DNA of 63,122 nt, filler included, from Octopus bimaculoides (GCF_001194135.2; 4 parts of 3 records of this genome joined end to end with filler, not necessarily neighbours in it), one strand, 5' to 3'; counted from the whole stretch's first letter, positions 23,573 through 42,294 are shown. Program-made: numbers and translations. Notes: generated by a model from the letters alone, not told the origin.

Positions 23573-23579
23573 TATATAT

Positions 23580-23612
<33 letters not shown>

Positions 23613-23949
23613 TGTGTGTCTGTGTGTGTCTGTGTCTGTGTGTGTTTGTACGGATTTGTAAATGACGAATCTAATCAACACTACAATCATCAGCTTTTTC
23701 GTACGTTTTGCTTCTTCAGTTAGATTCTCGGAAGTGAACGAGAAACTGTGTGAATGAAAGTGAATAAGAAGAAAGACGAAGAGAGAAAGAGAAAGAAAAT
23801 GATTGAGTAAGGTTGGAGATATCGAAACAATTTACATTATGAAAAATATTACTTAGATACACGCACACACATACACACGCAGAAGTACAGGATAAATATG
23901 AAAATACAGATGCACTTACATGTGTTTTATTGCGAGAGTGTTAGTGTAA

Positions 23950-23998
<49 letters not shown>

Positions 23999-24185
23999 TA
24001 AGATTCAATGTACTGATTCTTTATTTTTAAAATTATTTCCATGTTTAAATAAATTCCTTACGTTCACTTCACCTCAAATTGACAGTAAAATTCATCGAAT
24101 AAATAACAGATAAGTTATAAAAAATGTTTTGTTAACGATTATGTCAGTTCGCCGCCATCCCTACATACGTACATGCATACATATA

Positions 24186-24221
<36 letters not shown>

Positions 24222-24702
24222 TGATTTTTATTTTATTATTTTAATGATTATTACTTTGTATTTCATTATAGTTCTTTTTAGTNNNNNNNNNNNNNNNNNN
24301 NNNNNNNNNNNNNNNNNNNNNNNNNNNNNNNNNNNNNNNNNNNNNNNNNNNNNNNNNNNNNNNNNNNNNNNNNNNNNNNNNNNNNNNNNNNNNNNNNNNN
24401 NNNNNNNNNNNNNNNNNNNNNNNNNNNNNNNNNNNNNNNNNNNNNNNNNNNNNNNNNNNNNNNNNNNNNNNNNNNNNNNNNNNNNNNNNNNNNNNNNNNN
24501 NNNNNNNNNNNNNNNNNNNNNNNNNNNNNNNNNNNNNNNNNNNNNNNNNNNNNNNNNNNNNNNNNNNNNNNNNNNNNNNNNNNNNNNNNNNNNNNNNNNN
24601 NNNNNNNNNNNNNNNNNNNNNNNNNNNNNNNNNNNNNNNNNNNNNNNNNNNNNNNNNNNNNNNNNNNNNNNNNNNNNNNNNNNNNNNNNNNNNNNNNNNN
24701 NN

Positions 24703-24766
<64 letters not shown>

Positions 24767-25220
24767 ATGTAAAAACACTGCGAAGGATATATTTTAAATA
24801 CTTAAGATTATTTATGAATATATCAATGGCCAAACATCTTATCATAAAATATAAAAAGAAAAAACGTTTATGCTTATGAACAAGACAATTATAACAAAGG
24901 GTTAAGAAATCCTTACATGTTAAAAATAGCAACCAAAACGGCTGTAATGCCATTATATCACTCATATAATTTCTCCTCACGATAAAAACTGTCTTCGGGC
25001 AAAATGACAAATAGGTCACAAATGTTGCAAGTTTGAGAATTACAGGTCAGTGCATGTGGTATATTTGCAGCCGCTTTCCTTCTTTGCCTTGCACCTCGAA
25101 GCCTGTGAAATGTTTACCGGGATTTATTTAGTTTTAAGGCATTCGGATCTTGTTGAGAATATTTTTCCGCGCCGAAATTCTTATTAATATTACTGAATTA
25201 TTTTTCATGTTTTAACCTGT

Positions 25221-25639
25221 CTTGTATTCGTTTCAGTCATTGGAATGTGGCCATGCTGGAGCACAGCCTTTAGTCGAGCAAATCGACCCCAGGGCTTATT
25301 CTTTGTAAGCCTAGTACTTATTCTATCGTTTCCTTCTGACGGACTGCTAAGTTACTGGGACGGAAACACACCACCATCAGTTGTCAAGCGATGGGAAGGG
25401 ACAATGACAGACACACAAACATATACATATACATACATGCACACATGCACGCGCGCGCACACCCACCCACATATGTATATATATATAGGACGGGCTTCTT
25501 TCAGTTCCCGTCTCACTAGGTTTTGGTAGGCCCTAGGCTATAATACAAGACACTTGAACAAGGTGCCAGGCAATGAGACTGGACCCGGAACCATGTGGTT
25601 GTTAAGCAAGCTACTTACAACACAGCCATGCCTGCACCT
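25221..25639 (-). mobile_element. Composite tRNA-derived SINE (OK-like head + internal microsatellite + 3' tail)
   Basis: TTTCAGTCATT..GGCCATGCTGGAGCAC..TCGACCCCAGG.CTTATTCTTTGTAAGCCTAGTAC..(CA/TA)n..GACGGGCTTCTTTCAGTT..ACCATGTGGTTG..CACAGCCA. Confidence 0.9.
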
Positions 25640-26774
25640 CTCCTGCGCCATTGTCTGGTATATATTTTCGTTGTCTTTATGCTAGGCACAGAGATACTTA
25701 TACACACAAAGGCACATAGAAACAAACATACACATATGCAACGGGCTTCTATACAGTTTTTGTCAACTAAATTCAATAGCATGACACTGAGATGTCTGCG
25801 GGTTGAGTAGAAAAAAATTCGCTTCATATTCTGCGGAATGAGTATGAATCCGAAACCACGTGGCTCTTAAAGGAGATTCTATACCCCCAGCCTTCCTTGC
25901 GTCCACATCCAACCATACATTGTCGCCTTTAATTATAGCGAGGATTCCACTGATGTTTGTTTATTATCATATACTTATTACATTTAATCTATTCTATCTA
26001 CTTTCATGCTAAGTTTTACTGCAAGTGGGTTTTTATGAAGACGCACATTTTCATATATGCCTGCTTTTTTTATTTTAACTTACACACAATCATGTGTACG
26101 TCTGGGTAACGAAACCGGTATGACAATAAGTTTGAATATGAATATATCTCAGCCGGTGTGTGAGCGATTATGCATGTGCAAGATTACGTAATCGCATTAT
26201 TTGTGTATATAGTCAGCTATATAATATGTGTCTTATGTATAAATGCGCATTAAAATCTCAATGTACGCGAGCATTATATATTGATGAATGGATTATGCGT
26301 GCGTGTATGGGCATGAGTGAAAATCAAATAATGTCATTATGTGCACGAGCGTGATTGCGTGTAAAGGATTATGAGAGGTTACACTCTAAAACAGATATAA
26401 ACCTACATATAATTCTGAACGCATGTACGTATATGTACATATAAGTTTGAAACGCGTGAGCATACAAGTTTATGAATAAATTCTGGGCGCATTGGCGAGT
26501 GTAAATCTGTGCATATCCAGAGTGTAATGATATGTTTAGAGATGTGTGTATTTCTATGTGTAAAATCAAGTCTATGAGCATTGGTATACGCGTTTGCATG
26601 CACGAATATTAATACTCATATAGTTCTTGTATATGCGTGCAGGTAAACTTCGCACATATTTACATATATTCACAGAAAACTACTTATACAATGAAATATA
26701 AATACATAAGCACACATGCAAACACAGGCATGTGCGTGCGTATACGAGTGTGTGTTTATATTCGTGTATATATC

Positions 26775-26823
<49 letters not shown>

Positions 26824-27580
26824 TTATCTATATATATCTATATATATCTATATATANNNNNNNNNNNNNNNNNNNNNNNNNNNNNNNNNNNNNNNNNNNN
26901 NNNNNNNNNNNNNNNNNNNNNNNNNNNNNNNNNNNNNNNNNNNNNNNNNNNNNNNNNNNNNNNNNNNNNNNNNNNNNNNNNNNNNNNNNNNNNNNNNNNN
27001 NNNNNNNNNNNNNNNNNNNNNNNNNNNNNNNNNNNNNNNNNNNNNNNNNNNNNNNNNNNNNNNNNNNNNNNNNNNNNNNNNNNNNNNNNNNNNNNNNNNN
27101 NNNNNNNNNNNNNNNNNNNNNNNNNNNNNNNNNNNNNNNNNNNNNNNNNNNNNNNNNNNNNNNNNNNNNNNNNNNNNNNNNNNNNNNNNNNNNNNNNNNN
27201 NNNNNNNNNNNNNNNNNNNNNNNNNNNNNNNNNNNNNNNNNNNNNNNNNNNNNNNNNNNNNNNNNNNNNNNNNNNNNNNNNNNNNNNNNNNNNNNNNNNN
27301 NNNNNNNNNNNNNNNNNNNNNNNNNNNNNNNNNNNNNNATATATATATATATATATATATATATACGTGTGTGTGTGTTTGTGTATTGTGTGTGTATGTT
27401 TATACATACATGTGTATATAGATAAATAGATAGTGACAGAAGGATGCGGACACACGTGAGAAAAGAATGTATGTTGCACGAATATTTCTATGGAACCATT
27501 TTCTGCAATATTTAGTGTCACATTTTGCCCTTTCTTGTTCTTCTTCCTGTTTTTGAAAAATGTATCTTTCAATTCACTCG

Positions 27581-28804
27581 TATAATCACCACATCAAACG
27601 AAGTGTTCGCCTGAGTAAAGAATATTCAACTAAAATTATTTTTTTCGTGACAATCTTCTCCGTAGTTTGCATATTTTGATATTTTCCGTATTTTTTGTAG
27701 TTCTTATGCATTGTAAAACAGCAAAGGATGAGCACCGTACAGATACAACCCCACACACCTATAATGTTTATGCGGGCGCAAATATATAGGAAGATAAAAA
27801 TCACTACATTTTCTATCAAAGCAAAGCACGCCACTGACATATTCCCGCTCGTTTTCTGAAAATATTTTTCAGGAACTTCGTTCTTTCGGGTTTCTCGTTC
27901 ACTTGTCCTAAGAAAGCATTTTCACATGAAACTTTACTGTGAATATATTTACATCCTAGGTTATACTAACCTTAAATTGCACCACGTCCTAAACAGCGAA
28001 ATCCTGAATCTTTTTCATATATAGTGGCAATTTCACTGTCCGCTTATTCTAATATAACTACATATATAGTATTTTGTACTTTTGTTTTTTTTTAAATAAA
28101 ATTTATGAATAATTTAATGATAAACTATATATGTCGCTGAATATGCCAGGCTTCAGCATATTGTAAGCGTGGCATCATAGTCCTGCCACCATCATACATT
28201 TGTCATTTTCATAACATTGCAGCCACGTGAAGGCTGTTGTAGTATAGATGCTTAAGTACTTGGAAGCCATTCTGAATTTCTCGCAAGGTATCATTCCTCT
28301 GTCTCAGGACATCATAAATCTATAATAAGACCTTTTAAACATCGAATGTGTGGGAGGATTAATCTGAGTAAAATAGCAACCAAAAGAGACCCATATTTAT
28401 AAAAATGGTTGAGAAACATTGGCGTAGACAAAAACGTTTTTAAATTTTAAGTAGGCTATGGAATAACCCTTTCTCTTAAAGGCAGAAAGCCTGAAACATA
28501 GGGAGAGAAGACGAGTCGATTACATAGTCACCAGTGCTCAACTGGATCATGTTTTATCGCTCCCGAAAGGATGAAAGGCAAAGTCAACCTCGGCGGAATT
28601 TGAACACATAACGTAAGGGATGACGATATACCGCATAGCATTTCGTCAGGCGTGCTAACGATTCTACCAGCTCGGCACCTTAAGATCTACAAAAATACGG
28701 AAAATATCAAAATATGCAATCTACGCAGAAGATTGTCACGAAAAAATAAATTTAGTTGAATATTCTTTACTCAGGCGAACGCTTCGTTTGATGTGGTGAT
28801 TATA
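27581..28804. mobile_element. Non-autonomous element with ~125-bp terminal inverted repeats (27581-27706 / 28681-28804)
   Basis: TATAATCACCACATCAAACGAAG.GTTCGCCTGAGTAAAGAATATTCAAC...GTAG.TCTTA on both strands with a few mismatches; the ends read TA...TA. Confidence 0.8.
28467..28682 (-). mobile_element. Near full-length Nin/Deu-domain SINE nested inside the TIR element
   Basis: ...GAAAGGATGAAAGGCAAAGTCAACCTCGGCGGAATTTGAAC...GTGCTAACGATTCTACCAGCTCGGCACCTT. Confidence 0.85.
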
Positions 28805-28840
28805 TTACAACGTATTTCAGTTCTATCGTTTCATTGGTTT

Positions 28841-29221
28841 CTTTTGTTTGATTCAGTCTGCGGCCAAGCTGGATCACCGCCTTTTGTCGGAGAAATAGAC
28901 TCCGGGACTTATTCTTTGTAAGCCTAGTACTTTTTCTATCGGTCACTTTTGCCGAACCGCTAAGTTACGGGGACATAAACACACTAACATCGGTTGTCAA
29001 ATGATGTTGCGTTGGCAAACAAACATAAACACGCACACACACACACACACACACATGCGCACACACATATGCACACACACACATTCACACACATACATAT
29101 ATCTACGACGGGCTCCTTTCAGTATCCGTTTACAAAATCTACTCACAAGATGCCATGCTGTGGGACTGAACCCGATACCATATGGTTGGTAAGCAATATA
29201 TTTACCACACAGCCACTCCTG
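28841..29221 (-). mobile_element. Composite OK-like SINE
   Basis: Same tail / (CA)n / head arrangement as 25221-25639. Confidence 0.9.
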
Positions 29222-31076
29222 GTTGTGCATTGTATTTCTATTTTCCTTTATGATCCAGTCATTTCAGTGCAACCATCCTGGGACATTGTCTGTAAAGGTC
29301 TAGTCGTATACAATGAACACGTGTTCGTTTTATAGTTTCATGATTTTTCTTTCCCAGATTTTAGACCACTGCATAGATATATTGCCAACCTAAGCAATAC
29401 AAATGAAACGAATGCTAAAGAGGAACACAGAGCCACCCACACGTGCACGCGCGCACGTACACACATACAAACCCACACACACGCACATACACACGCATGC
29501 ACTCACACACACTTCCCTGTAATTTCACAGGGGAACAGAACTGGAAAAACCAGATTTTCAATGGTTTCAAAGTACGCACTTACATAACCCCCCCCCCACA
29601 TATATATATATATATATATATATATANNNNNNNNNNNNNNNNNNNNNNNNNNNNNNNNNNNNNNNNNNNNNNNNNNNNNNNNNNNNNNNNNNNNNNNNNN
29701 NNNNNNNNNNNNNNNNNNNNNNNNNNNNNNNNNNNNNNNNNNNNNNNNNNNNNNNNNNNNNNNNNNNNNNNNNNNNNNNNNNNNNNNNNNNNNNNNNNNN
29801 NNNNNNNNNNNNNNNNNNNNNNNNNNNNNNNNNNNNNNNNNNNNNNNNNNNNNNNNNNNNNNNNNNNNNNNNNNNNNNNNNNNNNNNNNNNNNNNNNNNN
29901 NNNNNNNNNNNNNNNNNNNNNNNNNNNNNNNNNNNNNNNNNNNNNNNNNNNNNNNNNNNNNNNNNNNNNNNNNNNNNNNNNNNNNNNNNNNNNNNNNNNN
30001 NNNNNNNNNNNNNNNNNNNNNNNNNNNNNNNNNNNNNNNNNNNNNNNNNNNNNNNNNNNNNNNNNNNNNNNNNNNNNNNNNNNNNNNNNNNNNNNNNNNN
30101 NNNNNNNNNNNNNNNNNNNNNNNNNNNNNNNNNNNNNNNNNNNNNNNNNNNNNNNNNNNNNNNNNNNNNNNNNNNNNNNNNNNNNNNNNNNNNNNNNNNN
30201 NNNNNNNNNNNNNNNNNNNNNNNNNNNNNNNNNNNNNNNNNNNNNNNNNNNNNNNNNNNNNNNNNNNNNNNNNNNNNNNNNNNNNNNNNNNTATATATAT
30301 ATATATGCATATATATTTATATAGATAGGGTGATAAATTGAATATTAATTCAATTTATTACCCTATCTTTATAAATAATAATTTAAATAGTTATGTTCTC
30401 CAACTGGCAACATTATACTGCAGTGAATTATTTTCTGCATAATATTTTCCGGAATTTTGCGCGCCGGAGCTGAGGCATTTTGAAAAGCAGCCCCAATGTA
30501 ATTGGTAGAACTATATGGAAGTCTTGTTTCATGAAGACAATTCGTGTATAATTCTGCAAATTATATTGATTCTAGAGCATCTATACTGATGAGAACACAA
30601 ATGATATTACGTAAGTATAACGTTAATGTTCGAAACTGCAGTCCATAGATAACTCTTTATTCTGCATATTTCAAATTTTGTCCTGTTCTGGCGTTTTCCG
30701 AAATTTTTCTGGAGAGCATTATTTTGGTTGGGTCGTTGATGACCTCTTTCTAGCATATTGGATGTCCACCTAGTGGTCATCCCTTATACACTATATGCAT
30801 GTATATATATACATATATATAATGCATATACATACGAACATACATGTGCCTAAGTGTATGTATTTGTTTGTGTGTGTGTGTACTTGTTGTGTACGTTCAG
30901 GCGAGTCTTGATTCTTCACTCACTGTGTTTGTATATGTGGAACGGATATATATGTACGTGTATCCAGTTTACGTATTATGAAGAAGGATAATACTGTGTT
31001 GTATATAAATGCTTTTCAGTCTTACTTATTTATTCATTTATTTTTGTTTTACAGCAAACACTTCTTTCTGGAGACA

Positions 31077-31952
31077 ATGGATGTAGACAACGCAATCAAG
31101 TCATTGATACATTTATTCGTCTTAATCATCGGTTCCGTGTTTAATATCTACTGCTTTGTGTCAATTCTGAGAAGCAAAGTTAGGCGATCCAAAATATGGA
31201 TGTACGTTATAATTTTGAACGTAACTGACACCATCGCTATGTACGGCTACAGTATCATAATCATATGCCATTTGAATGAGTTCAATATACTGAATGATAT
31301 AAAAGCCTTATGTAGATTAGTGTTTCTACTAACGGCGTTTTGCGGATTTGTTTCAATTTGGGTTTCAGCAACTATCGGTATTGAACGGACGTTATGCATT
31401 TTCTTTCCCATCATACACCGCGTAAATTGTACTTCATCTATCACAAAGACTGTGTTATTAATCATAATTATTTTATCTCTGCCATACTCAGTGGTGGCCA
31501 CTATTTACGTGCGCGAAGATAACGTGTGCTTTTACAAATACAAACACCTGTTCTATATAGATGTTACTCTGCAGGCTATACTACCCGCTGTGATAATGGG
31601 CTTCTGTAATATTGCCATTATCTACAAACTCTTTCATCGCCCTACTTCAATAGGAACCAATCCGTCATCAAAACACGCGGTCAAATCGCTTAAGCTCATT
31701 TTGGTCAACAATTTCATATTCATTGTTACAAATGTGATGGCTTTACTGATTTCAATTCTATCAAATGAATATGACTTGCTCCAATCCGATCATTTTGTAT
31801 ATTACATTATCGGAACTATATTAAACCATTTCACTAACGTATTCTTCTATCACAAAATGGCGTTTCAGTTTAGAGCCATGTTTAAATTCGAAAAGCGGCT
31901 TAAACATTTAAGGACACCCAGTGCCGACGCTCTAGCTCTATCGGCATATTAA
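31077..31952 (+). CDS. Orphan class A (rhodopsin-like) 7TM GPCR, copy 1 (291 aa; possibly extended by an upstream exon)
   Basis: Intact ORF with seven hydrophobic segments. Motifs: GSVFN (TM1), LNVTD (TM2), C before TM3, IERTLCIFFP (DRY-equivalent), LSLP (TM4), ECL2 Cys, LPAVIM..CNIAI (TM5), LNHFTNVFFY (TM7). ATG in ACAATGG context, 22 nt after the acceptor TTTTTGTTTTACAG (31054). The ORF-track start at 30978 is probably intronic. Confidence 0.9.
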   Translation: MDVDNAIKSLIHLFVLIIGSVFNIYCFVSILRSKVRRSKIWMYVIILNVTDTIAMYGYSIIIICHLNEFNILNDIKALCRLVFLLTAFCGFVSIWVSATIGIERTLCIFFPIIHRVNCTSSITKTVLLIIIILSLPYSVVATIYVREDNVCFYKYKHLFYIDVTLQAILPAVIMGFCNIAIIYKLFHRPTSIGTNPSSKHAVKSLKLILVNNFIFIVTNVMALLISILSNEYDLLQSDHFVYYIIGTILNHFTNVFFYHKMAFQFRAMFKFEKRLKHLRTPSADALALSAY

Positions 31953-31974
31953 AAATCTTACTGGAATCACAATG

Positions 31975-32022
31975 AATAAAGATGAGGAAATATACCGCTT
32001 TCAGGAATTATAATTGAATAAA
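31975..32022 (+). promoter_or_regulatory. Candidate polyadenylation signals of GPCR copy 1 (AATAAA at 31975 and 32017)
   Basis: Hexamers 23 and 65 nt after the stop, followed by GT/T-rich sequence; same in copy 2 (36252, 36294). Confidence 0.55.
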
Positions 32023-32474
32023 AAATTGTAATTAAACAATTACATACTTAAAACAACGTTATTTGGTCAGTTATTGTTGATTAATTTGTGTTGCTTTCCT
32101 TTCTGCAAAGTAATTTGGTGTAAATCTAAACATTGTGGTCTAAGTTTTTTATAGAATCGGTATCTCAAGATCATACACTAGAATTTCTTTACTGTTAAAT
32201 CGCATATTAACGTTAGCGTCTTCTATTTTCATATTAGAGTGATAATGATACTAAGAGACACAATAAGATGAATATTATCAAGATGCTGAGTCATTCATGA
32301 TCGATAGTAAAATGCATTGTGCATGATAAACCGAAGCATTTCCATCCACACAATTCTATCCAGGAATGTTTTTGAATAGAAATGAAATTCCCAAATCATC
32401 GGAATCATACTTAATTACATTTATATACCTTAGAACGACACAGTCTTTATTAATGAAGAACAACGTACTAAGTG

Positions 32475-32526
<52 letters not shown>

Positions 32527-32529
<3 letters not shown>

Positions 32530-32668
32530 TTTTATATTTATATAAGGGCATTACTATATAATAACGCCTCACGCCATGAGGGACTCTAAGGTCAGTAGTC
32601 TGACCTTAGAGTCCCTCATGGCGTGAGACGTTATTATATAGTAATGCCCTTATATAAATATAAAAATA
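32527..32668. repeat. Near-perfect palindrome: 69-bp arms, 4-nt loop (TAGT), one mismatch
   Basis: 32527-32595 pairs with 32600-32668; the only mismatch is C32567 vs A32628. Confidence 0.95.
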
Positions 32669-34204
32669 TATATTTCGGGAATAAATGATGGATTTTTTCC
32701 CTTATGAGATTTTTTTCACGCTAGCTACTTGATACATTCTTGTAAAAGNNNNNNNNNNNNNNNNNNNNNNNNNNNNNNNNNNNNNNNNNNNNNNNNNNNN
32801 NNNNNNNNNNNNNNNNNNNNNNNNNNNNNNNNNNNNNNNNNNNNNNNNNNNNNNNNNNNNNNNNNNNNNNNNNNNNNNNATATATATATATATATATATA
32901 TATAACGATATATTCATATTGTTTAGTTAAAGAATATCAAGATGTAAATTGGCCAATATTACAGTGCACTGCAGATCCTTCGTTGCTGTGATAATCAGAT
33001 ACCCATCCATGCTGCACTAATGTAATCATTTCTCGTTGAATTGATAAATTGATTGAAGTAAATTCTATATGTTAGTCATTAAAGTGTCTCATACCTTAAA
33101 TATGAACGTTAAAACGGAAAGGGTCTCAAATTATATATGACGGCCAACAATTTATGAAGTTTTACAGTGTAAAAGATACCGTATTCGATATGGAAAATGC
33201 TGAATACATTTTAATAGTAAGAAACCCGCATTTATAGGACGCTCCCACTTATGGCAGGTGTTGTAAATTATAGCTGGGCAGTCACACAACCACAATACCA
33301 ATCCGTAAAACGTCGTCTCTTGATATTCTAGTCAAAATAACGTAATTTACCTCGCCTCAGAATCCGATACTGCACACATATCTTTGCTTGTTGGTGTCAT
33401 CGCTCAGAGTTGGCCTGACGTTAAATGGGAAAAATAACTATGCCGTTCTGTAGCGTCGTTCGTGTAGAATAATTAAGCATACATAGGGAAACACCAAGTC
33501 CCATATTTTTCTGGAATGTGTTAAAACCATAACGAAGAATTGATATATTTTTAGCGAGAAAATTATTCTTATTTAACAAACAATTTTAAACCCCGTCATG
33601 AATATTGACAAAAGTTGTAAGTGAAACCAAATATAAATATGAATTTATTTACTTTGTAACTTTCTCAGACTCTTTTATCAGTTGTACTTCATTATCACAC
33701 AGGAAGGTATTCATTAAATTCACGAAAAAGTAATTAGTAGGTTCTTTATCTTTTGACAAGGTAAACGTCAAATGGGTACTCACTCGCTTGACAGTAACCA
33801 GTCAAAATATTATACAGGTATGCTGAATGAAAAGTAACGGATATTTAAGCAATGCCACTTTATTAGTTTATCTGAGGTCGACTAAATGCTAGAGCTTCGG
33901 CAAAATAAACTGACAAAAGAAATGCCAAACTAATGAAATGCAAAACATAATTGGGGTCAACTTGTTGAAGGAAGCCTGTCGCAGTCCCAATGTCGCAATG
34001 CGCAAAAGTATCAAATTTGAAGACGCTGTTATATGCAGACAATGGCTCTCAAGTGTTGTTTCTCAGGTCTTCTATTACATAAAAAAATGGCTCTTAAAAT
34101 GTTTGTGTGCCCGTATTTAGCAATATAAAAATCAACGACTATTCAGTCATTTGGAAGTTCATTTCAACAATGGATTAATATTCTTCCTTTCTGAGACTCT
34201 TCCA

Positions 34205-35095
34205 GAAGTGGCTGTGTGGTAAGAAGCTTGTATCCCAATCACATGGTTCTGCGTTTAGTCCCACTGCGTGGCAGCTTGGGCAAGTGTCTTCTACTATAGT
34301 CTCGGGCTGACCAAAGCCTTGTGAGTGGATTTCCTAGACGAAAACTAAAACACGCCAGTCGTATCTATCTATGTATCTATCTATCTATCCATCTCTCTTT
34401 CTCTCTGTATATATATATANNNNNNNNNNNNNNNNNNNNNNNNNNNNNNNNNNNNNNNNNNNNNNNNNNNNNNNNNNNNNNNNNNNNNNNNNNNNNNNNN
34501 NNNNNNNNNNNNNNNNNNNNNNNNNNNNNNNNNNNNNNNNNNNNNNNNNNNNNNNNNNNNNNNNNNNNNNNNNNNNNNNNNNNNNNNNNNNNNNNNNNNN
34601 NNNNNNNNNNNNNNNNNNNNNNNNNNNNNNNNNNNNNNNNNNNNNNNNNNNNNNNNNNNNNNNNNNNNNNNNNNNNNNNNNNNNNNNNNNNNNNNNNNNN
34701 NNNNNNNNNNNNNNNNNNNNNNNNNNNNNNNNNNNNNNNNNNNNNNNNNNNNNNNNNNNNNNNNNNNNNNNNNNNNNNNNNNNNNNNNNNNNNNNNNNNN
34801 ATATATATATATATATATATGAGTATGTATGTATGTATGTATGTATGTATGTATGTATGTATGTATGCATGCATGTATGTGTCTAGGTATGTACATGTTT
34901 GTGCGTCTGTGTTTGACGCCTAACATTGCTTAACAACAGATTATTCGTTTACGACAATGTAACCTAGCAGTTCGGCAAAAGTTACCGATATAATATGTAG
35001 TAGGCTTACAAAGAATAAGTCCTGGGGTCGATTTGGTCGTTCACAGGTGGTGCCCCAGCATGGCTGCGTTCAAATGACTGAAACAAAAAAAAAAC
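34205..35095 (+). mobile_element. Composite OK-like SINE spanning an N-gap, at the junction of the GPCR duplication
   Basis: Head GTGGCTGTGTGGTAAGAAGCTTG...CCTTGTGAGTGGATTT (34205-34365); microsatellite plus gap; tail ...GTTCGGCAAAAG...AAGAATAAGTCCTGGGGTCGAT...CAAATGACTGAAAC. Confidence 0.85.
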
Positions 35096-35353
35096 AAAGA
35101 ATAATATATATATAACACATATACATAGAAACATACAAATGAGTGTGTGCGTGTGTGTGTGCTTGTTGTGCATGTTAGTGTGAGTCTTGATTCTTCACTC
35201 ACTGTGTTTGTATATGTTCAACGGATATATATCCGTATATACTGTTTCCGTATTATGATGAATGTTAAAACTGTGTTGTATATAAATGCTTTTCCGTTTC
35301 ACTTATTTATTCATTTATTTTTGTTTTACAGCAAACACTTCTATCTGGAGACA

Positions 35354-36229
35354 ATGATTGTAGAACACGTAATCCAGTCAATAATACATTTATTCTTCAT
35401 AATCGTCGGTACTGTGTTTAATATCTACTGCTTTGTGTCAATTCTGAGAAGCAAAGTTAGGCGATCAAAAATATGGCTGTACGTTATAACTTTGAACGTA
35501 ACTGACACCATCGCTATGTACGGCTACAGTATCATAATCATATGCCATTTGCATGTGATCACCATTCTGAATGATATAAAACCCTTATGTAGATTAGTGT
35601 TTCTACTAACAGCGTCTTGCGGATTTGTTTCAACTTGGGTTTCAGCAACTATCGGTATTGAACGGACGTTATGCATTTTCTTTCCCATCATACATCGCGT
35701 GTATTGTACTTCAGTTTTCACAATGACTGTGTTATTAATCATAATTATTCTATCGCTGCCATACACAGTGGTGGCCACTATTTACGTACGCGATGATAAC
35801 GTGTGCTTTTTTAAATACAGACACCTATTCTATATAGATGTTACTCTGCAGGCTATACTACCCGCTGCGATAATGGGCGTTTGTAATATTGCCATTATCT
35901 ACAAACTTTTTCATCGGCCTACTTCAATAGGAACCAATCCGTCATCAAAACACGCGATCAAATCGCTTAAGCGCATTTTGGTCAACAATTTCATATTCGT
36001 GACTACGAATGTAATCGTGTTACTGCTTTCAATATTATCAAATGAATATGACTTCCTCAATTCCGATCTGTTTTTATATTACTTTCTAGGAACTGTATTA
36101 AACCATTTCACTAACGTGTTCTTCTATCACAAAATGGCGTTTCAGTTTAAAGCCATGTTTAAATTCGATAAACGGCTTAAGAAGTTATGGATACCCAGTG
36201 CCGACGCTCTAGCTCTATCGGCATATTAA
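35354..36229 (+). CDS. Orphan class A (rhodopsin-like) 7TM GPCR, copy 2 (291 aa)
   Basis: Same length, motifs and upstream acceptor (TTTTACAG at 35331) as copy 1; 48/291 residues differ by manual alignment; offset 4277 bp. Confidence 0.9.
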   Translation: MIVEHVIQSIIHLFFIIVGTVFNIYCFVSILRSKVRRSKIWLYVITLNVTDTIAMYGYSIIIICHLHVITILNDIKPLCRLVFLLTASCGFVSTWVSATIGIERTLCIFFPIIHRVYCTSVFTMTVLLIIIILSLPYTVVATIYVRDDNVCFFKYRHLFYIDVTLQAILPAAIMGVCNIAIIYKLFHRPTSIGTNPSSKHAIKSLKRILVNNFIFVTTNVIVLLLSILSNEYDFLNSDLFLYYFLGTVLNHFTNVFFYHKMAFQFKAMFKFDKRLKKLWIPSADALALSAY

Positions 36230-37137
36230 AAATCTTACTGGAATCACAATGAATAAAGATGAGGAAATATACCGCTTTCAGGAATTATAATTGAATAAAA
36301 AATTGTAATTAAACAATTACATACTTAAAACAACGTTATTTGGTCAGTTATTGTTGATTAATTTGTGTTGCTTTCCATTCTGCAAAGTAATGTGGTGTAA
36401 ATCTAAACATTGTGTTCCTAAGCTTCGAATAGTATCGGTGTCTTAAGATCGTACAATGGTATCTCTTTACTCTGACATCACATATTTAATGCTATTATTG
36501 AAGTTAGAATCTTCTACTTTCTTATTCCAGTGATACTGACACAAAGATACATGATAAGATGAACATTATCCATATGGAGAGTCATTTATGCTCCATAGTA
36601 CAATGCATAGTATAGTGTATGATAAACTGAAGCATTTCCAGCTATATAATCCTTTCCAGAAATGTTTTTGAAGAGAAATGCAACTCCCAAAATATCGGAA
36701 TCAAACTTAATTATATTTATATACCTTAGCGCTACTCATTCTGTGTTAATGAAGCTCTCGTCAGATTATTGCACAGGTATGCTGAATGAAAATTAACGGA
36801 CATTTAAGGAACGCCACTTTATTATTTCTTCTGAGGTCGACTAAATTCTAGAGCTTCCGCAAACTGAAGTACAGTAAAAGAAAATTGGGGTCGACATGTT
36901 GGAGGAATTCTGTCGCAGTTTCAACGTCCGAATGCGCAGAAGTATTAAATTCGAAGACGCTTTTATATGCAGGCAGTAGCTCCCAGGGTTTGTTTCTCAG
37001 GTATTGCATTACATCAAAATGGCTGTTATAAATGTTTGTCTGCTCGTATTTAGCAATAGAAAAATCAAGGACTATTTAAGTCATTTTGAAGTCCATTTAA
37101 AAACTGGATTAATATTCGTATTTTCTTATACTTTCCT

Positions 37138-37272
37138 TGGTGTAGCTGTGTGATAAGAAGCATTCAGTCCCGTGGCATGGGACCTGTGACAGGTGTCTTC
37201 TATTATAGACCCGGGCCGACAAATCTTTGTGAATGGATTTCGTAGATTGAAACTGAAAGAAGCTCATCGTAT
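37138..37272 (+). mobile_element. OK-like SINE head at the position equivalent to 34205 in the second duplication unit
   Basis: The flank 36770-37130 aligns with 33810-34200, and both are followed by the SINE head. Confidence 0.8.
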
Positions 37273-38385
37273 GTACATATATATATATATATANNNNNNN
37301 NNNNNNNNNNNNNNNNNNNNNNNNNNNNNNNNNNNNNNNNNNNNNNNNNNNNNNNNNNNNNNNNNNNNNNNNNNNNNNNNNNNNNNNNNNNNNNNNNNNN
37401 NNNNNNNNNNNNNNNNNNNNNNNNNNNNNNNNNNNNNNNNNNNNNNNNNNNNNNNNNNNNNNNNNNNNNNNNNNNNNNNNNNNNNNNNNNNNNNNNNNNN
37501 NNNNNNNNNNNNNNNNNNNNNNNNNNNNNNNNNNNNNNNNNNNNNNNNNNNNNNNNNNNNNNNNNNNNNNNNNNNNNNNNNNNNNNNNNNNNNNNNNNNN
37601 NNNNNNNNNNNNNNNNNNNNNNNNNNNNNNNNNNNNNNNNNNNNNNNNNNNNNNNNNNNNNNNNNNNNNNNNNNNNNNNNNNNNNNNNNNNNNNNNNNNN
37701 NNNNNNNNNNNNNNNNNNNNNNNNNNNNNNNNNNNNNNNNNNNNNNNNNNNNNNNNNNNNNNNNNNNNNNNNNNNNNNNNNNNNNNNNNNNNNNNNNNNN
37801 NNNNNNNNNNNNNNNNNNNNNNNNNNNNNNNNNNNNNNNNNNNNNNNNNNNNNNNNNNNNNNNNNNNNNNNATATATATATATATATACACACATGCATA
37901 ACCTTGTCCTTTCAGTTAACGTCTAACAAATCTCCCATTCAGTAGGTGTCAATACGAACACATCAGAGCCTGCGCCTATATAACTTTATTTGCATTAGAA
38001 TTTGGTCTATCACCAGTCATGCCCGCCTGCTTATTGATTAAATATTTGAAAACGATTATTTTATGGATGTAGGTTTAGAATGTAAGTATTGTATCTGATA
38101 TAAATATTTTATTTCTAAGGAAAATATCAGCAGGCATCTCAATACCTCCGTTTAATAGCTTCATCGTACTAGCCTTCTTCTTCTGAAAACTTAACGCCAT
38201 GAAACGGGTGTTAGTATTCAGTTTACGGTGAAGTAATTTAGAAAAGTACCTCATTTATATTGGTATGGTTATGAAATATCAGACTTAAATTTCGTACATA
38301 TGATGATATCGTCGCTTATCTGCAACTATTGACCGTTATAATATAGGGGAGAAGAAACTAGTCTTTATTAAATATTTACAATTCT

Positions 38386-38520
38386 CCGCCAAGGTTGAAT
38401 TTGCATTTCACCCTTTCGGGGTCGATAAATTAAGCACCAGTTGAGTACTGGGGTCGATCTAATCGACTGGCCTCCTCCCCACAAAATTCAGGGCACTCTG
38501 CCTACAGTAGAAAAGAATAT
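38386..38520 (+). mobile_element. 5'-truncated Nin/Deu-domain SINE
   Basis: CCGCCAAGGTTGAATTTGCATTTCACCCTTTCGGGGTCGATAAATTAAGCACCAG...GTAGAAAAGAATAT. Confidence 0.85.
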
Positions 38521-38602
38521 ATACAAGTCTGTACATTCTTTGAGTGATATTACCAATCGTTTGCTCACTTACATACCTACTTAGCTATATAAATAAAGGT
38601 TG

Positions 38603-38652
<50 letters not shown>

Positions 38653-39351
38653 CACGGGTCTCTTTGGGCTTGTATCTACAAAATACTTTCACAAGCTTTT
38701 GTCGGCTAGACCTACAGCACAAAACACATGCTCAGGCGGTAGAAATTAGCCCAGTCACATGTATGAAAAGCAAGCTTCTCGCCACACAACCACATCATAT
38801 ATACTATATATTTATATTTGTATGTATGTATTTATGCATGTATATGTGTTTGTGCACTCACGGTATTAAAGTCGATGCTAGGTAGCACACCTAATAGGAT
38901 AAGCCGAGAGCTTTGAAACTAATACCATTACATTCTTAATATTTTGAACAACCTTCTAAATTATTTATTCTGGCCGAAACAGAAGACTAGAGAAACAACT
39001 TGAGAGTTTATTAAAATTAATTAAATCTCGAATATATTTTTTTCTAGAATGTCTTTGATATTTGCCAGAACGGTTACCGCTCCGGATATATTAGATATCG
39101 ATGATAATTGAAAACCGAATATAATACACATGAATGGAAGATAGCCGCATCAATAAATCCGATGGTTGATTAATTTTCTTCAACGCAGTGATATTATTCT
39201 TAGCACTGGAAAATGACAACAACATAGAACAATATTGTATAATAATCAGCAAGCAGTGATCTCTAATATTGTTACAAATGTAGAATTTAAACTTACACAT
39301 ATTACGTATACAATACGATTTGGAGAAAAATGAATTACTTTATAGCAAATA

Positions 39352-39585
39352 CAGTAATCCCTCGCAATGTCGTTGTTCACCTATCGCGGTTCACCTATCG
39401 CGGTTCACCTATCGTGGTTTATTATCTAAGATTCCTCTGTGGTGTTGTTTCGCATTTATAATAAAATAAATATATAGAAATTATAAGAATAATTAAAAAG
39501 AATATACAGTAGTCTTTTGACTTCGCAGATTTTCACCTATCGCGGGTTTTGGAGCATAACATCCGCGATAGTCGAGGGATCACTG
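39352..39585. mobile_element. Tigger/pogo-like MITE (234 bp) with TA target-site duplication
   Basis: TA|CAGTAATCCCTCG...CGAGGGATCACTG|TA (12/13 TIR match); internal TTCACCTATCG(C/T)GG repeats. Confidence 0.85.
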
Positions 39586-39702
39586 TATAATGATTACTTT
39601 AGCAACGACAGTTGCAATGATACCCGCAATGAGTGATATGATATCCGCGTAGCACATTGTTACGCATCCACACAAAAATCATTTACATGTAGATATGTCA
39701 AT

Positions 39703-39756
<54 letters not shown>

Positions 39757-39912
39757 CNNNNNNNNNNNNNNNNNNNNNNNNNNNNNNNNNNNNNNNNNNN
39801 NNNNNNNNNNNNNNNNNNNNNNNNNNNNNNNNNNNNNNNNNNNNNNNNNNNNNNNNNNNNNNNNNNNNNNNNNNNNNNNNNNNNNNNNNNNNNNNNNNNN
39901 NNNNNNNNNNNN

Positions 39913-39946
<34 letters not shown>

Positions 39947-40009
39947 TTATGCAAACGAGTAGTAAAACTTTCCAGTTGGACATGTTTTTAATCTTTTAAG
40001 TTTTGCCGG

Positions 40010-40310
40010 TTTGAATCATTAGATTGCGGCCTTGCAGGTACACCACCTTTCTTATCTAGTTGAATGAATGAATTGCTCCCAGTACTTCTTTCATTTAAGC
40101 CTGGTATTTATTATATCGGGCTTTATGCTGATCCACTAAGTTACGGGGACGCAAGCACACCGACACCGGTGGTCCAGCGGTAGAGGTGGGAAAAGCACAG
40201 ACACAAACACACACATATGCACACACATATGCACACGCATACACACACACACACACCTGCACACACACACACACATGTACGATGGTCTTCTTTGAGTTTC
40301 TCTCTACAAC
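40010..40310 (-). mobile_element. Degenerate OK-like SINE tail and partial head
   Basis: TAAGCCTGGTA.TTATT..ATCGG...CTAAGTTACGGGGACG...(CA)n..ACGATGGTCTTCTTTGAGTTTC. Confidence 0.75.
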
Positions 40311-40379
40311 GAGACTAGATATGACTGAACAGAACGCTAAATGAAGAACCAGTGAGAAATAATATCTAAGAAATACCAT

Positions 40380-41400
40380 ATATTTATTGAGTGTATGTCA
40401 TATCCAAGAAATTAAGAACATTGAGCAAAATCATGCCGTATCCAGGGCGATGAAGAGATCGCAGAACATGCATTTGATAATTGTTCCTGACAGGTATACT
40501 TGTCAAAACTATCAGTACGAAACAGAAGGAATGACATTCAGATACTTAATCTCGACAGGCATCAATGTGTCAATGCCTTTTCTGCAATCCAACAAAATAT
40601 TCTTTGCATATGAGGAAATTTCTCGCCAAACTGCAAGTATTTTCCCTGAGTAATCTGCAAAGGCTTGGACCTGTTCCATGATAAGAACTGGTGGGAACAC
40701 AAACCCGGAAGTGCTTGAAGATGACCACATCTCACTCATTTGGAACTTCACTGTTCAAACTGACAGAAAGATAGATGCGAACACGTGAGACATTATATTG
40801 AAAGACTTCAGGCAAAAAATATACCTCCTTATCGATATGACTGACCCAATCCAACATGAATGTATCTGTCAAGACCGACTAAAAACTAATCAAGCATAAA
40901 GATCTTGAAATAAAAATTGGCAAAATGTGGAATGTCAAAACTAAGACAATATCCTTTGGCATAGGTGCCATAGGAATGATAGCAAAAGAGGATGATTGCT
41001 GCATAACTGAGATACCAGGAAATACCCAAATGGAAGAAATTATAAAAATAGTGCCTATTGGAACTGCCATTTCCTACGTAAAATACTGTCTATGTAATCC
41101 GAAAAATATTCTAATCTACAAACAGTGTCAAAATACTTTTAAATGTACATAGCAACAAACACCTTTTACTGTCATCTTAACATCAGACTACCATCTCACC
41201 AAATTAATTTAAAGACAAACTTTTAATTTCCTTATGTTTTGATAGACATTCTTTAGAACAATACTTGTGCAAAACTAGCTATAGAGCACCCTAGTCATAA
41301 TACCAACTTGAACTTTTAACTTGTTGTCTCTCGATGTCTCTGTGTATGACTTGGAGCCAACTTGTACAAGATCAAAACAAAAACCAACCATATGATAATA
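40380..41400 (+). mobile_element. R4/Dong-like non-LTR retrotransposon 3' remnant (restriction-like endonuclease domain plus 3' UTR)
   Basis: KNWWEHKP..VLEDDHISLIWNFTVQTDRKIDANT*DIILKD..LIDM..KHKDLEIKIGKMWNVKTKTISFGIGAIGMI..IPGN..EEIIKIVPIGTA, matching the REL PD-(D/E)xK region. Confidence 0.8.
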
Positions 41401-41439
41401 AGAATATAGTAGTTTTCCAATTAAACCATATCCCTTTGA

Positions 41440-41810
41440 TTCCAGGATCATAAAGGAAGAAAACGACAGACAAAAATATACAATCCATTATAATTTGAAA
41501 TTGAAAGAATTTCGAATATGGATGCTGCAATATTTGTGCCTAAAGTTATTGGTGCATTCGCAAGTGTAAGGAAAGGTATAGACAAATGGTTGCAAGAGAT
41601 TAGAATAGTATGTGAATAGTATGTCCTGAAGAGCTTCTACAGAAACTTTGCCTTTTCGGGACAGGAAAGATTATCAGGAAGGATGTAAACACTTGAAATA
41701 CTGTTAAAAGCTAGTGGATATCTAAGGTTCCAAGTAGTAACCCGCAATCGAGATAAATACTAGCAAAAATAAGACCGAACATGAGTCAAATGAATAATAA
41801 TAATAATGAA

Positions 41811-41866
<56 letters not shown>
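41440..41866 (+). mobile_element. Second R4/Dong-like 3' end with (AAT)n tail
   Basis: FEIERISNMDAAIFVPKVIGAFASVRKGIDKWLQEIRI..ELLQKLCLFGTGKIIRK, then a short UTR and an (AAT)n run to ~41866. Confidence 0.7.
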
Positions 41867-41868
<2 letters not shown>

Positions 41869-42294
41869 CGTGCGATCACACACGCAAAACCAACACCGGA
41901 AAGTTTACAAACTATATAAAAAAGAAATAGAACAAAATAGTAAGTACATATATTGAATAACTACGCATACACTCGAACGTGTACACAAAGATATATACGT
42001 TTCGATACCCACAGAACTACGCATGCATCTTAATGTTTACACAACTACCTGAAAATCACAGGACACACTCACGCATACGAAAACACATATCACACACGAA
42101 GCAAAACCAAAACTTTTTTTTCTTCTTTATATATTTTTATTTTGTGAACAAACACAGACAGTGAACCATTCATAAGTTTAAAACGCCACACACANNNNNN
42201 NNNNNNNNNNNNNNNNNNNNNNNNNNNNNNNNNNNNNNTTAATTAATTAANNNNNNNNNNNNNNNNNNNNNNNNNNNNNNNNNNNNNNNNNNNN

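What the first reader, a model, noticed from the sequence alone, without database searches (positions are those of the whole stretch)
30812..37272. Tandem pair of intact, diverging orphan GPCRs with non-canonical class A motifs
Seen in the sequence: two 291-aa ORFs, both free of stops and frameshifts, differing at 48 residues. Changes cluster at the N-terminus/TM1 (10 of the first 20), ECL1, and TM6-ECL3-TM7 (positions ~216-248), while ICL1 (21-40) and the TM5-ICL3 stretch (181-200) are identical. Motifs are atypical: ERT for DRY, no TM4 Trp, no CWxP, NHFTNVFFY for NPxxY. Established: NxxxN(F/V)xxY-type TM7 and tandem single-exon arrays occur in FMRFamide/srw-like receptor expansions, which include proposed molluscan chemoreceptors. 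Inference: a young chemosensory or peptide-receptor subfamily diversifying its ligand side while conserving G-protein coupling.
Basis: partly seen in the sequence, partly recalled or inferred. Interest (0 to 1): 0.72.

Follow-up and report, generated by a model that had tools for sequence, protein, structure and literature searches.

The report
Tandem pair of divergent orphan GPCR genes
Two neighbouring, intact copies of a fast-evolving orphan G-protein-coupled receptor gene, made by a recent local duplication of a kind already described in molluscs; their function is untested.

Summary
Two uninterrupted 291-codon reading frames (31077-31952 and 35354-36229, + strand) differ at 48 residues. 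They sit in a ~4.3 kb tandem duplicated unit, and neither touches an assembly gap.

They encode very divergent class A (rhodopsin-like) 7TM receptors. Their nearest relatives, at 20-26% identity, are short invertebrate orphans of the FMRFamide-receptor-like / GPR139 type. ERx for DRY, no CWxP Trp and N-F-x-x-Y for NPxxY are traits of that whole family. Only the lost TM6 proline and the Val in TM7 are specific to this clade.

A related species has one co-orthologue (81% identity). A codon model gives omega 0.18 on that branch and 0.79 on the two post-duplication branches (p=1e-5), which cannot be told from 1 (p=0.36). Intact frames in both copies are still unlikely under pure neutrality (roughly 1e-4).

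Amino-acid changes are about 2-fold enriched on the extracellular side (p=0.012). However, omega is the same on both sides (0.62 vs 0.57), and constraint relaxed at least as much on the cytoplasmic side. So "ligand-side diversification with conserved coupling" is weakly supported, and a chemosensory role is untested.

This is a new member of a known kind: lineage-specific tandem class A GPCR duplicates in molluscs. Interest is modest.

The parts
31077..31952 (+). Copy A coding sequence: 291 aa plus stop, a single uninterrupted exon encoding a 7TM class A-like receptor
   Evidence: ORF and translation. Pfam 7tm_1 scores 38.5 bits against a cut-off of 30.5. AlphaFold2 model has 7 helices plus helix 8, pTM 0.72. 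Foldseek TM-score is 0.72-0.75 to opioid and somatostatin receptors.
35354..36229 (+). Copy B coding sequence: 291 aa plus stop, gapless alignment to copy A with 48 aa differences
   Evidence: Pfam 7tm_1 scores 28.4 bits, just below the cut-off of 30.5. All family-invariant residues are retained.
30813..32458 (+). Duplicated unit, copy A, proximal block (264 nt upstream flank, CDS, 506 nt downstream flank)
   Evidence: blastn self-comparison: 87.3% over 1665 nt to 35106-36754. Flank divergence is 13% with 5 indel events.
35106..36754 (+). Duplicated unit, copy B, proximal block
33801..34384 (+). Duplicated unit, copy A, distal block, ending at a microsatellite and gap 34420-34800
   Evidence: 73% identity over 586 nt to 36760-37292
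36760..37292 (+). Duplicated unit, copy B, distal block, ending at gap 37294-37871
32459..33800 (.). Stretch present only downstream of copy A (insertion in A or deletion in B). It begins with (TATC)n and a near-perfect 150-nt foldback at 32523-32672, and contains gap 32749-32879
31036..31054 (+). Pyrimidine-rich tract ending in CAG (TTTATTTTTGTTTTACAG), 22 nt before the ATG. It looks like a splice acceptor and may mark a 5'UTR intron. The copy B equivalent is at 35313-35331
   Evidence: Conserved in A, B and both related-species contigs, while conservation further upstream drops to about 50-57%. Inference only; no transcript data.
31916..32099 (+). 184-nt tract (last 12 codons plus 147 nt of 3'UTR, with AATAAA at 31975 and 32017) that is 100% identical to copy B (36193-36376). 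Probable gene-conversion patch and/or constrained 3'UTR
   Evidence: Longest identical run, and 84.8% identity to L001. Sliding identity profile. Sequence. No RNA structure signal, z=+0.78.
34420..34800 (.). Assembly gap between the two units. The tandem adjacency depends on this join
   Evidence: Flanked by (TATC)n/(TA)n and (TA)n/(TATG)n microsatellites.

Best explanation
These are two paralogous genes, each with a single coding exon, made by a recent DNA-level tandem duplication of a ~4.3 kb unit. Each encodes a short (291 aa), very divergent class A 7TM receptor. The receptors form a lineage-restricted offshoot of the invertebrate FMRFamide-receptor-like / GPR139-related superfamily.

Shown:
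- The gene was under purifying selection before the duplication (omega about 0.18).
- After it, both copies evolved about four times faster at the protein level (omega about 0.8).
- Both copies kept their reading frames and every family-invariant residue.

Inferred:
- Both copies are still functional receptors under relaxed, possibly partly diversifying, constraint. Occasional gene conversion between them would explain the identical 184-nt 3' tract.
- They work like other class A receptors. A small ligand or peptide binds in the extracellular pocket, and the signal passes through R3.50, Y5.58 and N7.49/Y7.53 to a G protein.
- Loss of W6.48, P6.50 and P7.50 suggests the TM6/TM7 switch may operate differently.
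- The near-absent N-terminus, short length, rapid turnover and tandem arrangement fit a chemoreceptor-like or lineage-specific peptide-sensing role. No expression or ligand data were available.
For: Structure of the locus:
- Intact 291-aa ORFs with a gapless alignment.
- The duplicated unit includes the flanks, so this is not retroposition.

Receptor identity:
- 7tm_1 match.
- 7TM model and Foldseek matches.
- Both copies retain N1.50, D2.50, the C3.25-ECL2 Cys pair, E/R3.49-3.50, P5.50, N7.49, Y7.53 and the helix 8 Phe.
- In an exhaustive HMMER search the nearest hits are short orphans (E 1e-19 to 1e-15) followed by a long tail. 45/58 of the nearest hits carry N-F-x-x-Y and 43/58 carry T-x-P.
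- The relatives hit Pfam Srw and Srsx.
- The family profile's best solved structure is GPR139 (2e-30), which also has NFFLY. GPR139/142 are reported as sister to the protostome FMRFamide-type-1/MIP/myosuppressin receptor clade (PMC8557429).

Selection:
- Pairwise dN/dS is 0.60 for A-B, against 0.20 and 0.23 to the related-species gene.
- Three-taxon ML branch model: omega 0.785 post-duplication vs 0.176, LRT p=1.3e-5.
- Under neutrality, P(no stop in both copies) is about 0.03-0.07. About 5.8 indels would be expected in the CDS from the flank rate and none is seen, P about 0.003.

Gene start:
- In the related species there is a stop 38 codons upstream of the start Met and no other Met in between, which supports the 291-aa start.

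Precedent:
- Tandem lineage-specific class A GPCR duplicates are documented in cephalopods and other molluscs (PMC6408891; PMC11886862; PMC11589774).
Against: - Post-duplication omega cannot be distinguished from 1 (p=0.36), so one copy could already be drifting.
- Copy B scores below the Pfam cut-off and has the higher branch omega (0.95 vs 0.63, not significant).
- There is no transcript, expression or ligand evidence.
- Three micro-switch residues normally needed for class A activation are missing: W6.48, P6.50 and P7.50.
- The window clade alone matches solved GPCRs only weakly (best hit GPER1, 1.9e-6). Placement in the FMRFamide-R-like/GPR139 group therefore rests on ranked similarity, not on a phylogeny.
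- The host organism was not identified by any tool.
- Adjacency of the copies crosses an unresolved gap.
Confidence: 0.62

Rival explanations
1. One copy, more likely B, is a young pseudogene or a gene on the way to loss. After duplication it has drifted neutrally and simply has not yet acquired a disabling mutation, while the other copy carries the ancestral function.
For: - Omega on the post-duplication branches is 0.79 and not different from 1.
- Branch estimates are A 0.63 and B 0.95.
- B falls below the Pfam 7tm_1 cut-off, 28.4 vs 30.5 bits.
- Constraint relaxed on the cytoplasmic side as much as on the extracellular side.
- P(no stop) for a single copy under neutrality is about 0.2, which is not small.
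Against: - No indel in 873 nt of either copy, although the flanks carry 5 indel events in 754 nt, none a multiple of 3.
- None of the family-invariant or nearly invariant positions is hit in either copy.
- Substitutions are split about evenly between the lineages, 17 in A and 21 in B.
- The A versus B omega difference is not significant, p=0.57.
Confidence: 0.22
2. Adaptive diversification, the reader's reading: positive selection on ligand-contact residues drives the two copies to different ligands while the G-protein interface is held constant.
For: - Amino-acid differences are enriched on the extracellular half, 30/133 vs 18/158, p=0.012.
- The N-terminus/TM1 cluster has P=0.025.
- By my own numbering from the conserved anchors, which is inference, differences fall at positions that line the pocket in other class A receptors: 3.40, 6.51, 7.39 and 7.43.
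- Branch-level positive selection has been reported in cephalopod class A expansions (PMC6408891).
Against: - Omega is below 1 everywhere. The extracellular half (0.62) and the cytoplasmic half (0.57) do not differ.
- The extracellular bias is also present between species, where it reflects ordinary weaker constraint (omega 0.30 vs 0.15).
- There are 18 cytoplasmic-side changes, including ICL2, TM6 positions 6.31 and 6.36, and helix 8.
- Three to four hits among about 20 pocket positions is what chance predicts (about 3.3).
- The identical stretches are not longer than chance, P=0.38.
- Three sequences cannot support a site test.
Confidence: 0.13
3. Assembly artefact: the two copies are unmerged haplotypes, or were mis-scaffolded across the 34420-34800 gap, and the real genome has one gene here.
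For: - The two units are separated by an unresolved gap.
- The assembly is highly fragmented, with 7 gaps in 18.6 kb.
- Only one copy was found in the related species.
Against: - Divergence is 9% in the CDS, 13% in the near flanks and 27% in the distal block, plus a 1.34 kb indel. From general knowledge, that is far beyond allelic variation.
- The sequence upstream of each unit is different.
- Even if the join were wrong, these would still be two distinct paralogues elsewhere in the genome.
Confidence: 0.03

Closest known systems
Lineage-specific tandem expansions of class A GPCRs in molluscs and cephalopods (Ritschard et al. 2019, PMC6408891; Nath et al. 2025, PMC11886862; 'FMRFamide_R-like' clusters in Lymnaea, PMC11589774)
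   Same: - Tandem local duplicates.
- Class A 7TM receptors.
- No one-to-one orthologue: two copies here against one in a related species.
- Elevated omega after duplication.
- Greater variability on the extracellular side.
- Orphan ligand status.
   Different: - Only a pair is visible in this 18.6 kb piece, and no third copy or fragment was found. The published cases are clusters of 4-26 genes.
- I could not check whether this pair belongs to one of the published groups.
- Nath et al. report that their lineage-specific expansions keep DRY and NPxxY as the common motifs. This clade has ERT and NVFFY and lacks P6.50.
GPR139/GPR142 and the protostome FMRFamide-type-1 / MIP / myosuppressin / proctolin receptor supergroup (Thiel et al. 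2021, PMC8557429)
   Same: - GPR139 is the best solved-structure match for the family profile, 2.1e-30.
- GPR139 shares the Phe in place of Pro in TM7 (NFFLY).
- The relatives match Pfam Srw.
   Different: - Only 20-26% identity even to the nearest invertebrate relatives.
- The window clade alone does not pick GPR139.
- GPR139 keeps DRY and W-A-P in TM6, whereas the window clade has ERT and no W6.48 or P6.50.
- The N-terminus is much shorter.
- Ligands (amidated aromatic peptides, aromatic amino acids) are untested here.
Nematode serpentine chemoreceptor families Srw, Srsx, Srx and Srbc (Pfam PF10324, PF10320, PF10328, PF10316)
   Same: - Short 7TM proteins.
- Fast-evolving and arranged in tandem.
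- Weak profile similarity.
- Relatives of the window proteins pass or approach the Srw and Srsx thresholds.
   Different: The window proteins themselves are below every cut-off: Srbc 16.6 and 20.3 bits against 22, Srx 14.2 against 23.8, Srsx 11.7 against 24.1, and no Srw hit at all.

Membership tests
Class A (rhodopsin-like) GPCR, Pfam PF00001 7tm_1 | Profile score at or above the curated gathering threshold (30.5 bits) | tested here: inconclusive
   Copy A scores 38.5 bits and passes. Copy B scores 28.4 bits and falls just below. The related-species orthologue and all 12 aligned relatives match 7tm_1.
Class A (rhodopsin-like) GPCR, Pfam PF00001 7tm_1 | Seven-transmembrane fold with helix 8 | tested here: met
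   AlphaFold2 model: pLDDT 71, pTM 0.72, seven long helices plus helix 8. Full-length Foldseek matches to class A receptors, TM 0.72-0.75, probability 1.00.
Class A (rhodopsin-like) GPCR, Pfam PF00001 7tm_1 | Anchor residues N1.50, D2.50, C3.25-ECL2 disulfide pair, R3.50, P5.50, Y7.53 | tested here: met
   N23, D51, C79/C151, R104, P170 and Y258 are invariant across the 12-sequence family alignment and present in both copies.
Class A (rhodopsin-like) GPCR, Pfam PF00001 7tm_1 | Canonical micro-switch motifs D/ERY, CWxP and NPxxY | tested here: not met
   The window clade has ERT and no W6.48. P6.50 is replaced by M, I or V at residue 221, and TM7 reads N-V-F-F-Y. The first and last deviations, and the lack of W6.48, are shared by the nearest relatives.
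FMRFamide-receptor-like / GPR139-142 supergroup | Nearest relatives among all proteins belong to that group (TM7 N-F-x-x-Y, TM6 T-x-P, Srw-type Pfam hits, GPR139 as best solved structure) | tested here: met
   Exhaustive HMMER ranking. Motif census: 45/58 with NFxxY and 43/58 with T-x-P. Srw hits in 7/12 relatives. GPR139 is top for the family profile.
FMRFamide-receptor-like / GPR139-142 supergroup | The protein itself carries the family's TM6/TM7 signature and matches GPR139 best | tested here: not met
   TM7 has Val rather than Phe at 7.50, and the TM6 Pro is lost. The window-clade profile alone ranks GPER1 first, at only 1.9e-6.
FMRFamide-receptor-like / GPR139-142 supergroup | Phylogenetic placement inside the clade with support; activation by peptides with an amidated aromatic C-terminus | not tested
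   No reference receptor set could be obtained for a tree. Ligand assays are experimental.
Nematode-type serpentine chemoreceptors (Pfam Srw, Srsx, Srx, Srbc) | Profile score at or above the curated threshold | tested here: not met
   All scores are below cut-off for both window proteins, and there is no Srw hit.
Lineage-specific tandem class A GPCR expansion (as defined by Nath 2025 and Ritschard 2019) | Tandem arrangement and no one-to-one orthologue in related species | tested here: met
   Two copies 4.28 kb apart on one scaffold. There is one co-orthologue in the related species, with dS 0.14 within the pair against 0.47 between species. Caveat: a gap lies between the copies.
Lineage-specific tandem class A GPCR expansion (as defined by Nath 2025 and Ritschard 2019) | Large clade (at least 10 cephalopod genes in Ritschard's criterion); expression in sensory or peripheral tissue | not testable with these tools
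   No access to the whole genome or to RNA-seq. Only 6 protein families reach E<1e-10 in 1.84 billion representatives, so the clade is small.

The most novel reading that the evidence does not exclude
The clade could be a functional class A receptor that has dispensed with four activation micro-switch residues at once: Y3.51, W6.48, P6.50 and P7.50. It was nevertheless held under purifying selection between species (omega about 0.18). It might therefore signal by a non-canonical TM6/TM7 mechanism. Alternatively it might act without a G protein, for example as a constitutive, scaffolded or co-receptor protein using its conserved S/T-A-aromatic C-terminus. The duplication would then be a natural experiment in how such a receptor diversifies.
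Probability: 0.1. Interest if true: 0.55.

Novelty: new member of a known kind. Interest (0 to 1): 0.25.

Why it matters
If both copies are expressed receptors, the pair is a small, clean example of how new invertebrate receptors arise: duplication, a roughly four-fold relaxation of constraint, and patchy gene conversion. It is also a class A receptor clade that lacks the TM6 proline and toggle-switch Trp. Two things follow for the scan. First, the 'atypical motifs' are a family signature and should not be read as novelty. Second, extracellular clustering of differences needs a dN/dS control before it is called ligand-side diversification.

Tried and rejected
1. Word-indexed protein searches with copy A, with a 12-sequence profile and with P0004 returned almost nothing beyond self-hits and gave no source names. 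Relatives came only from the exhaustive HMMER search, which carries no annotation. Cluster look-up gave no names either.

2. Exact look-up of both window proteins in public assemblies found nothing.

3. I tried to identify the organisms behind the relatives through run and assembly accessions in the literature (SRR11869384/85/91, ERR3431203, GCA_022702875). There were no hits, so the host taxon stays unverified. From my own memory only, the AT-rich, microsatellite-dense sequence and the SINE-like repeat fit an octopod genome.

4. Rfam and tRNA scans of the whole piece found nothing.

5. Folding the conserved 3'UTR tract gave no structure signal.

6. tblastn for further copies or pseudogene fragments in the piece found none.

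7. The upstream in-frame ATG (324-aa and 360-aa ORFs) was rejected as the start. It is not conserved, and in the related species a stop precedes the start Met with no other Met in between.

8. Retroposition was rejected as the origin, because homology extends well into both flanks.

9. Enrichment of differences at canonical ligand-pocket positions was considered and dropped. The 3-4 hits equal the chance expectation.

Full report
**What is in the sequence**

The piece (23573-42194) is 35% G+C and is broken by seven N-gaps. All but one gap is flanked by microsatellites.

Two long ORFs on the + strand stand out. Each encodes 291 aa, and the two align without gaps. There are 48 amino-acid and 80 nucleotide differences: 83.5% and 90.9% identity.

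Neither coding sequence touches a gap. Gap 32749-32879 lies in a ~1.34 kb stretch (32459-33800) found only downstream of copy A. Gap 34420-34800 lies between the two repeat units. The frames are therefore continuous, but the adjacency of the copies depends on a scaffold join that I cannot verify.

A self-comparison defines the duplicated unit. Region 30813-32458 matches 35106-36754 (87% over 1665 nt), and 33801-34384 matches 36760-37292 (73%). The period is about 4.28 kb. Homology runs through both flanks, so this is a DNA-level tandem duplication and not retroposition. No third copy or fragment is present in the piece.

**Where the gene starts and ends**

Both copies have open frame upstream of the Met, giving the 324-aa and 360-aa ORFs. 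In the related-species contig, however, a stop lies 38 codons upstream and there is no other Met in between. A 4-nt indel also breaks the frame upstream. The 291-aa start is therefore the conserved one.

A pyrimidine-rich tract ending in CAG lies 22 nt before the ATG (31036-31054 in A). It is conserved in all four sequences, while conservation further upstream falls to about 50-57%. It looks like a splice acceptor for a 5'UTR intron. This is inference without transcripts.

Two AATAAA signals follow the stop, at 31975 and 32017.

**What the proteins are**

- Copy A passes Pfam 7tm_1 (38.5 bits against a cut-off of 30.5). Copy B falls just short at 28.4 bits. The nematode chemoreceptor families (Srbc, Srx, Srsx) score below their cut-offs, and Srw does not hit.
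- An AlphaFold2 model of copy A (12-sequence alignment, pLDDT 71, pTM 0.72) has seven long helices and helix 8, with only two or three residues before TM1.
- Foldseek aligns the model full-length to opioid and somatostatin receptors at TM 0.72-0.75.
- The family alignment keeps N1.50 (N23), D2.50 (D51), the C79/C151 pair, E103-R104, P5.50 (P170), N254, Y258 and the helix 8 Phe. All are present in both copies.

**Relatives**

The word-indexed search found only the window protein itself and one 291-aa protein of 81% identity, P0002. P0002 is encoded on 1.7 kb contigs from sequencing runs of another organism. Those contigs align through both flanks and are therefore genomic DNA.

An exhaustive HMMER search of 1.84 billion representatives gave 253 hits at E<1e-3 but only six at E<1e-10. 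The nearest are short orphans of 275-311 aa at 20-26% identity. One of them, P0004, comes from the same sequencing project as P0002. None carries a name.

Of the 58 nearest representatives, 45 have N-F-x-x-Y in TM7 and none was detected with NPxxY. ERx with a non-Tyr third residue is usual (ERT in six), and 43 have T-x-P where CWxP would be. Seven of 12 aligned relatives hit Pfam Srw.

The family profile's best solved structure is GPR139 (2.1e-30), which itself has NFFLY. GPR139/142 are reported as the deuterostome sister of the protostome FMRFamide-type-1/MIP/myosuppressin/proctolin receptor clade (PMC8557429).

So the 'non-canonical motifs' are a family signature. Specific to the window clade are Val at 7.50 and loss of the TM6 proline (M, I or V at residue 221). 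On its own the window clade matches solved GPCRs only weakly, with GPER1 best at 1.9e-6. I therefore file it as a derived offshoot near that superfamily and not as a demonstrated member.

**Selection**

Pairwise Nei-Gojobori estimates:

| Comparison | dN | dS | omega |
|---|---|---|---|
| A vs B | 0.085 | 0.142 | 0.60 |
| A vs related-species gene | 0.097 | 0.476 | 0.20 |
| B vs related-species gene | 0.108 | 0.473 | 0.23 |

The duplication therefore post-dates the species split, or has been homogenised since. The related species shows one co-orthologue.

I wrote a three-taxon maximum-likelihood codon branch model (F3x4). It gives omega 0.785 on the two post-duplication branches and 0.176 on the remaining branch (LRT p=1.3e-5). 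Fixing the post-duplication omega at 1 is not rejected (p=0.36), and A (0.63) and B (0.95) do not differ (p=0.57).

Pure neutrality in both copies is nevertheless unlikely:
- Simulated substitutions leave both frames stop-free only 3-7% of the time.
- The flanks carry five indel events in 754 nt, none a multiple of three. That predicts about 5.8 in the coding sequence, and none is seen (P about 0.003).

The joint probability of roughly 1e-4 is my arithmetic from them.

**Where the changes fall**

I used the model's helices to split the protein into an extracellular half and a cytoplasmic half. The extracellular half has 30 differences in 133 residues and the cytoplasmic half 18 in 158 (Fisher p=0.012).

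Omega, however, is 0.62 and 0.57 respectively. Between species the same halves give 0.30 and 0.14-0.17. The extracellular bias is therefore the ordinary one. Constraint relaxed at least as much on the cytoplasmic side: about 3.7-fold, against about 2-fold on the extracellular side (my arithmetic).

Permutation of the 48 differences shows that only the N-terminal cluster is nominally unusual (P=0.025). The TM6-TM7 patch (P=0.12) and the identical stretches (P=0.38) are within chance.

Numbering from the conserved anchors (my inference) puts differences at 3.40, 6.50, 6.51, 7.39 and 7.43. Three or four hits among about 20 canonical pocket positions is the chance expectation.

**Gene conversion**

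A 184-nt tract (31916-32099: the last 12 codons plus 147 nt of 3'UTR) is identical in A and B. It is only 84.8% identical to the related species. At the coding-sequence divergence of 9%, a run this long is very improbable, of order 1e-5 by my arithmetic. The best explanation is a recent conversion patch, possibly combined with 3'UTR constraint. There is no RNA-structure signal.

Windowed dS ranges from 0.05 to 0.39, so the copies may be mosaics and dS may understate the age of the duplication.

**Comparison with the literature**

Tandem, lineage-specific class A GPCR duplicates are documented in several places:
- In cephalopods, with elevated omega on some branches and greater extracellular variability (PMC6408891; PMC11886862).
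- In Lymnaea, as 'FMRFamide_R-like' clusters of 4-26 genes (PMC11589774).

This pair fits that kind. I could not test whether it belongs to a published group, whether the organism is a cephalopod, or whether either copy is expressed.

**Verdict**

The most likely reading (0.62) is two functional, recently duplicated orphan receptors under relaxed, possibly partly diversifying, constraint with occasional gene conversion. The main rival (0.22) is that one copy, more likely B, is on the way to loss. Directed ligand-side positive selection (0.13) lacks support, and an assembly artefact (0.03) is unlikely. This is a new member of a known kind, and its interest is modest.

Noticed in passing
window 31916-32099 (copy A) and 36193-36376 (copy B): A 184-nt tract spanning the last 12 codons and 147 nt of 3'UTR (with two AATAAA signals) is 100% identical between the paralogues. 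The rest of the CDS differs by 9% and the flanks by 13%, and the tract is 84.8% identical to the related species. Probable gene-conversion patch and/or constrained 3'UTR element.
   Followed up: partly
window 32523-32672: Near-perfect 150-nt foldback (inverted repeat, 94.7% self-complementary) directly after a (TATC)n microsatellite. It lies inside the ~1.34 kb stretch present only downstream of copy A, and looks like a MITE or foldback element.
   Followed up: no
window 25218-25511, 28838-29135, 34825-35096 (- strand), 40096-40309: Four copies of a ~250-300 nt dispersed SINE-like repeat with an internal (CA)n run (72-75% pairwise identity). No tRNA-like head was found by ARAGORN or Rfam. One copy abuts the start of duplicated unit B, so repeat-mediated unequal exchange could have made the duplication (speculation).
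   Followed up: partly
C-termini of copy A and B (window 31941-31949, 36218-36226) and of relatives P0002-P0060: The window proteins and their closest relatives end in [S/T]-A-[Y/F/I] (LSAY, LTAF, KSAI). 22 of 59 related proteins end in [S/T]-x-hydrophobic, which resembles a class I PDZ-binding motif and hints at scaffolded receptors.
   Followed up: partly
window 31036-31054 and 35313-35331: Conserved polypyrimidine tract plus CAG, 22 nt upstream of the start codon in both copies and in the related species. It looks like a splice acceptor, so the genes may have a 5'UTR intron although the coding sequence is a single exon.
   Followed up: partly
window 40883-41149: An 89-codon open frame (KLIKHKDLEIKIGKMWNVKTKTISFGIGAIG...) that, from memory, resembles the conserved C-terminal region of a non-LTR retrotransposon ORF. 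Probably a decayed LINE fragment.
   Followed up: no
window 27581-27706 and 28681-28804: A 126-nt inverted repeat pair (94% identity) about 1 kb apart, upstream of the receptor genes. Not examined further.
   Followed up: no
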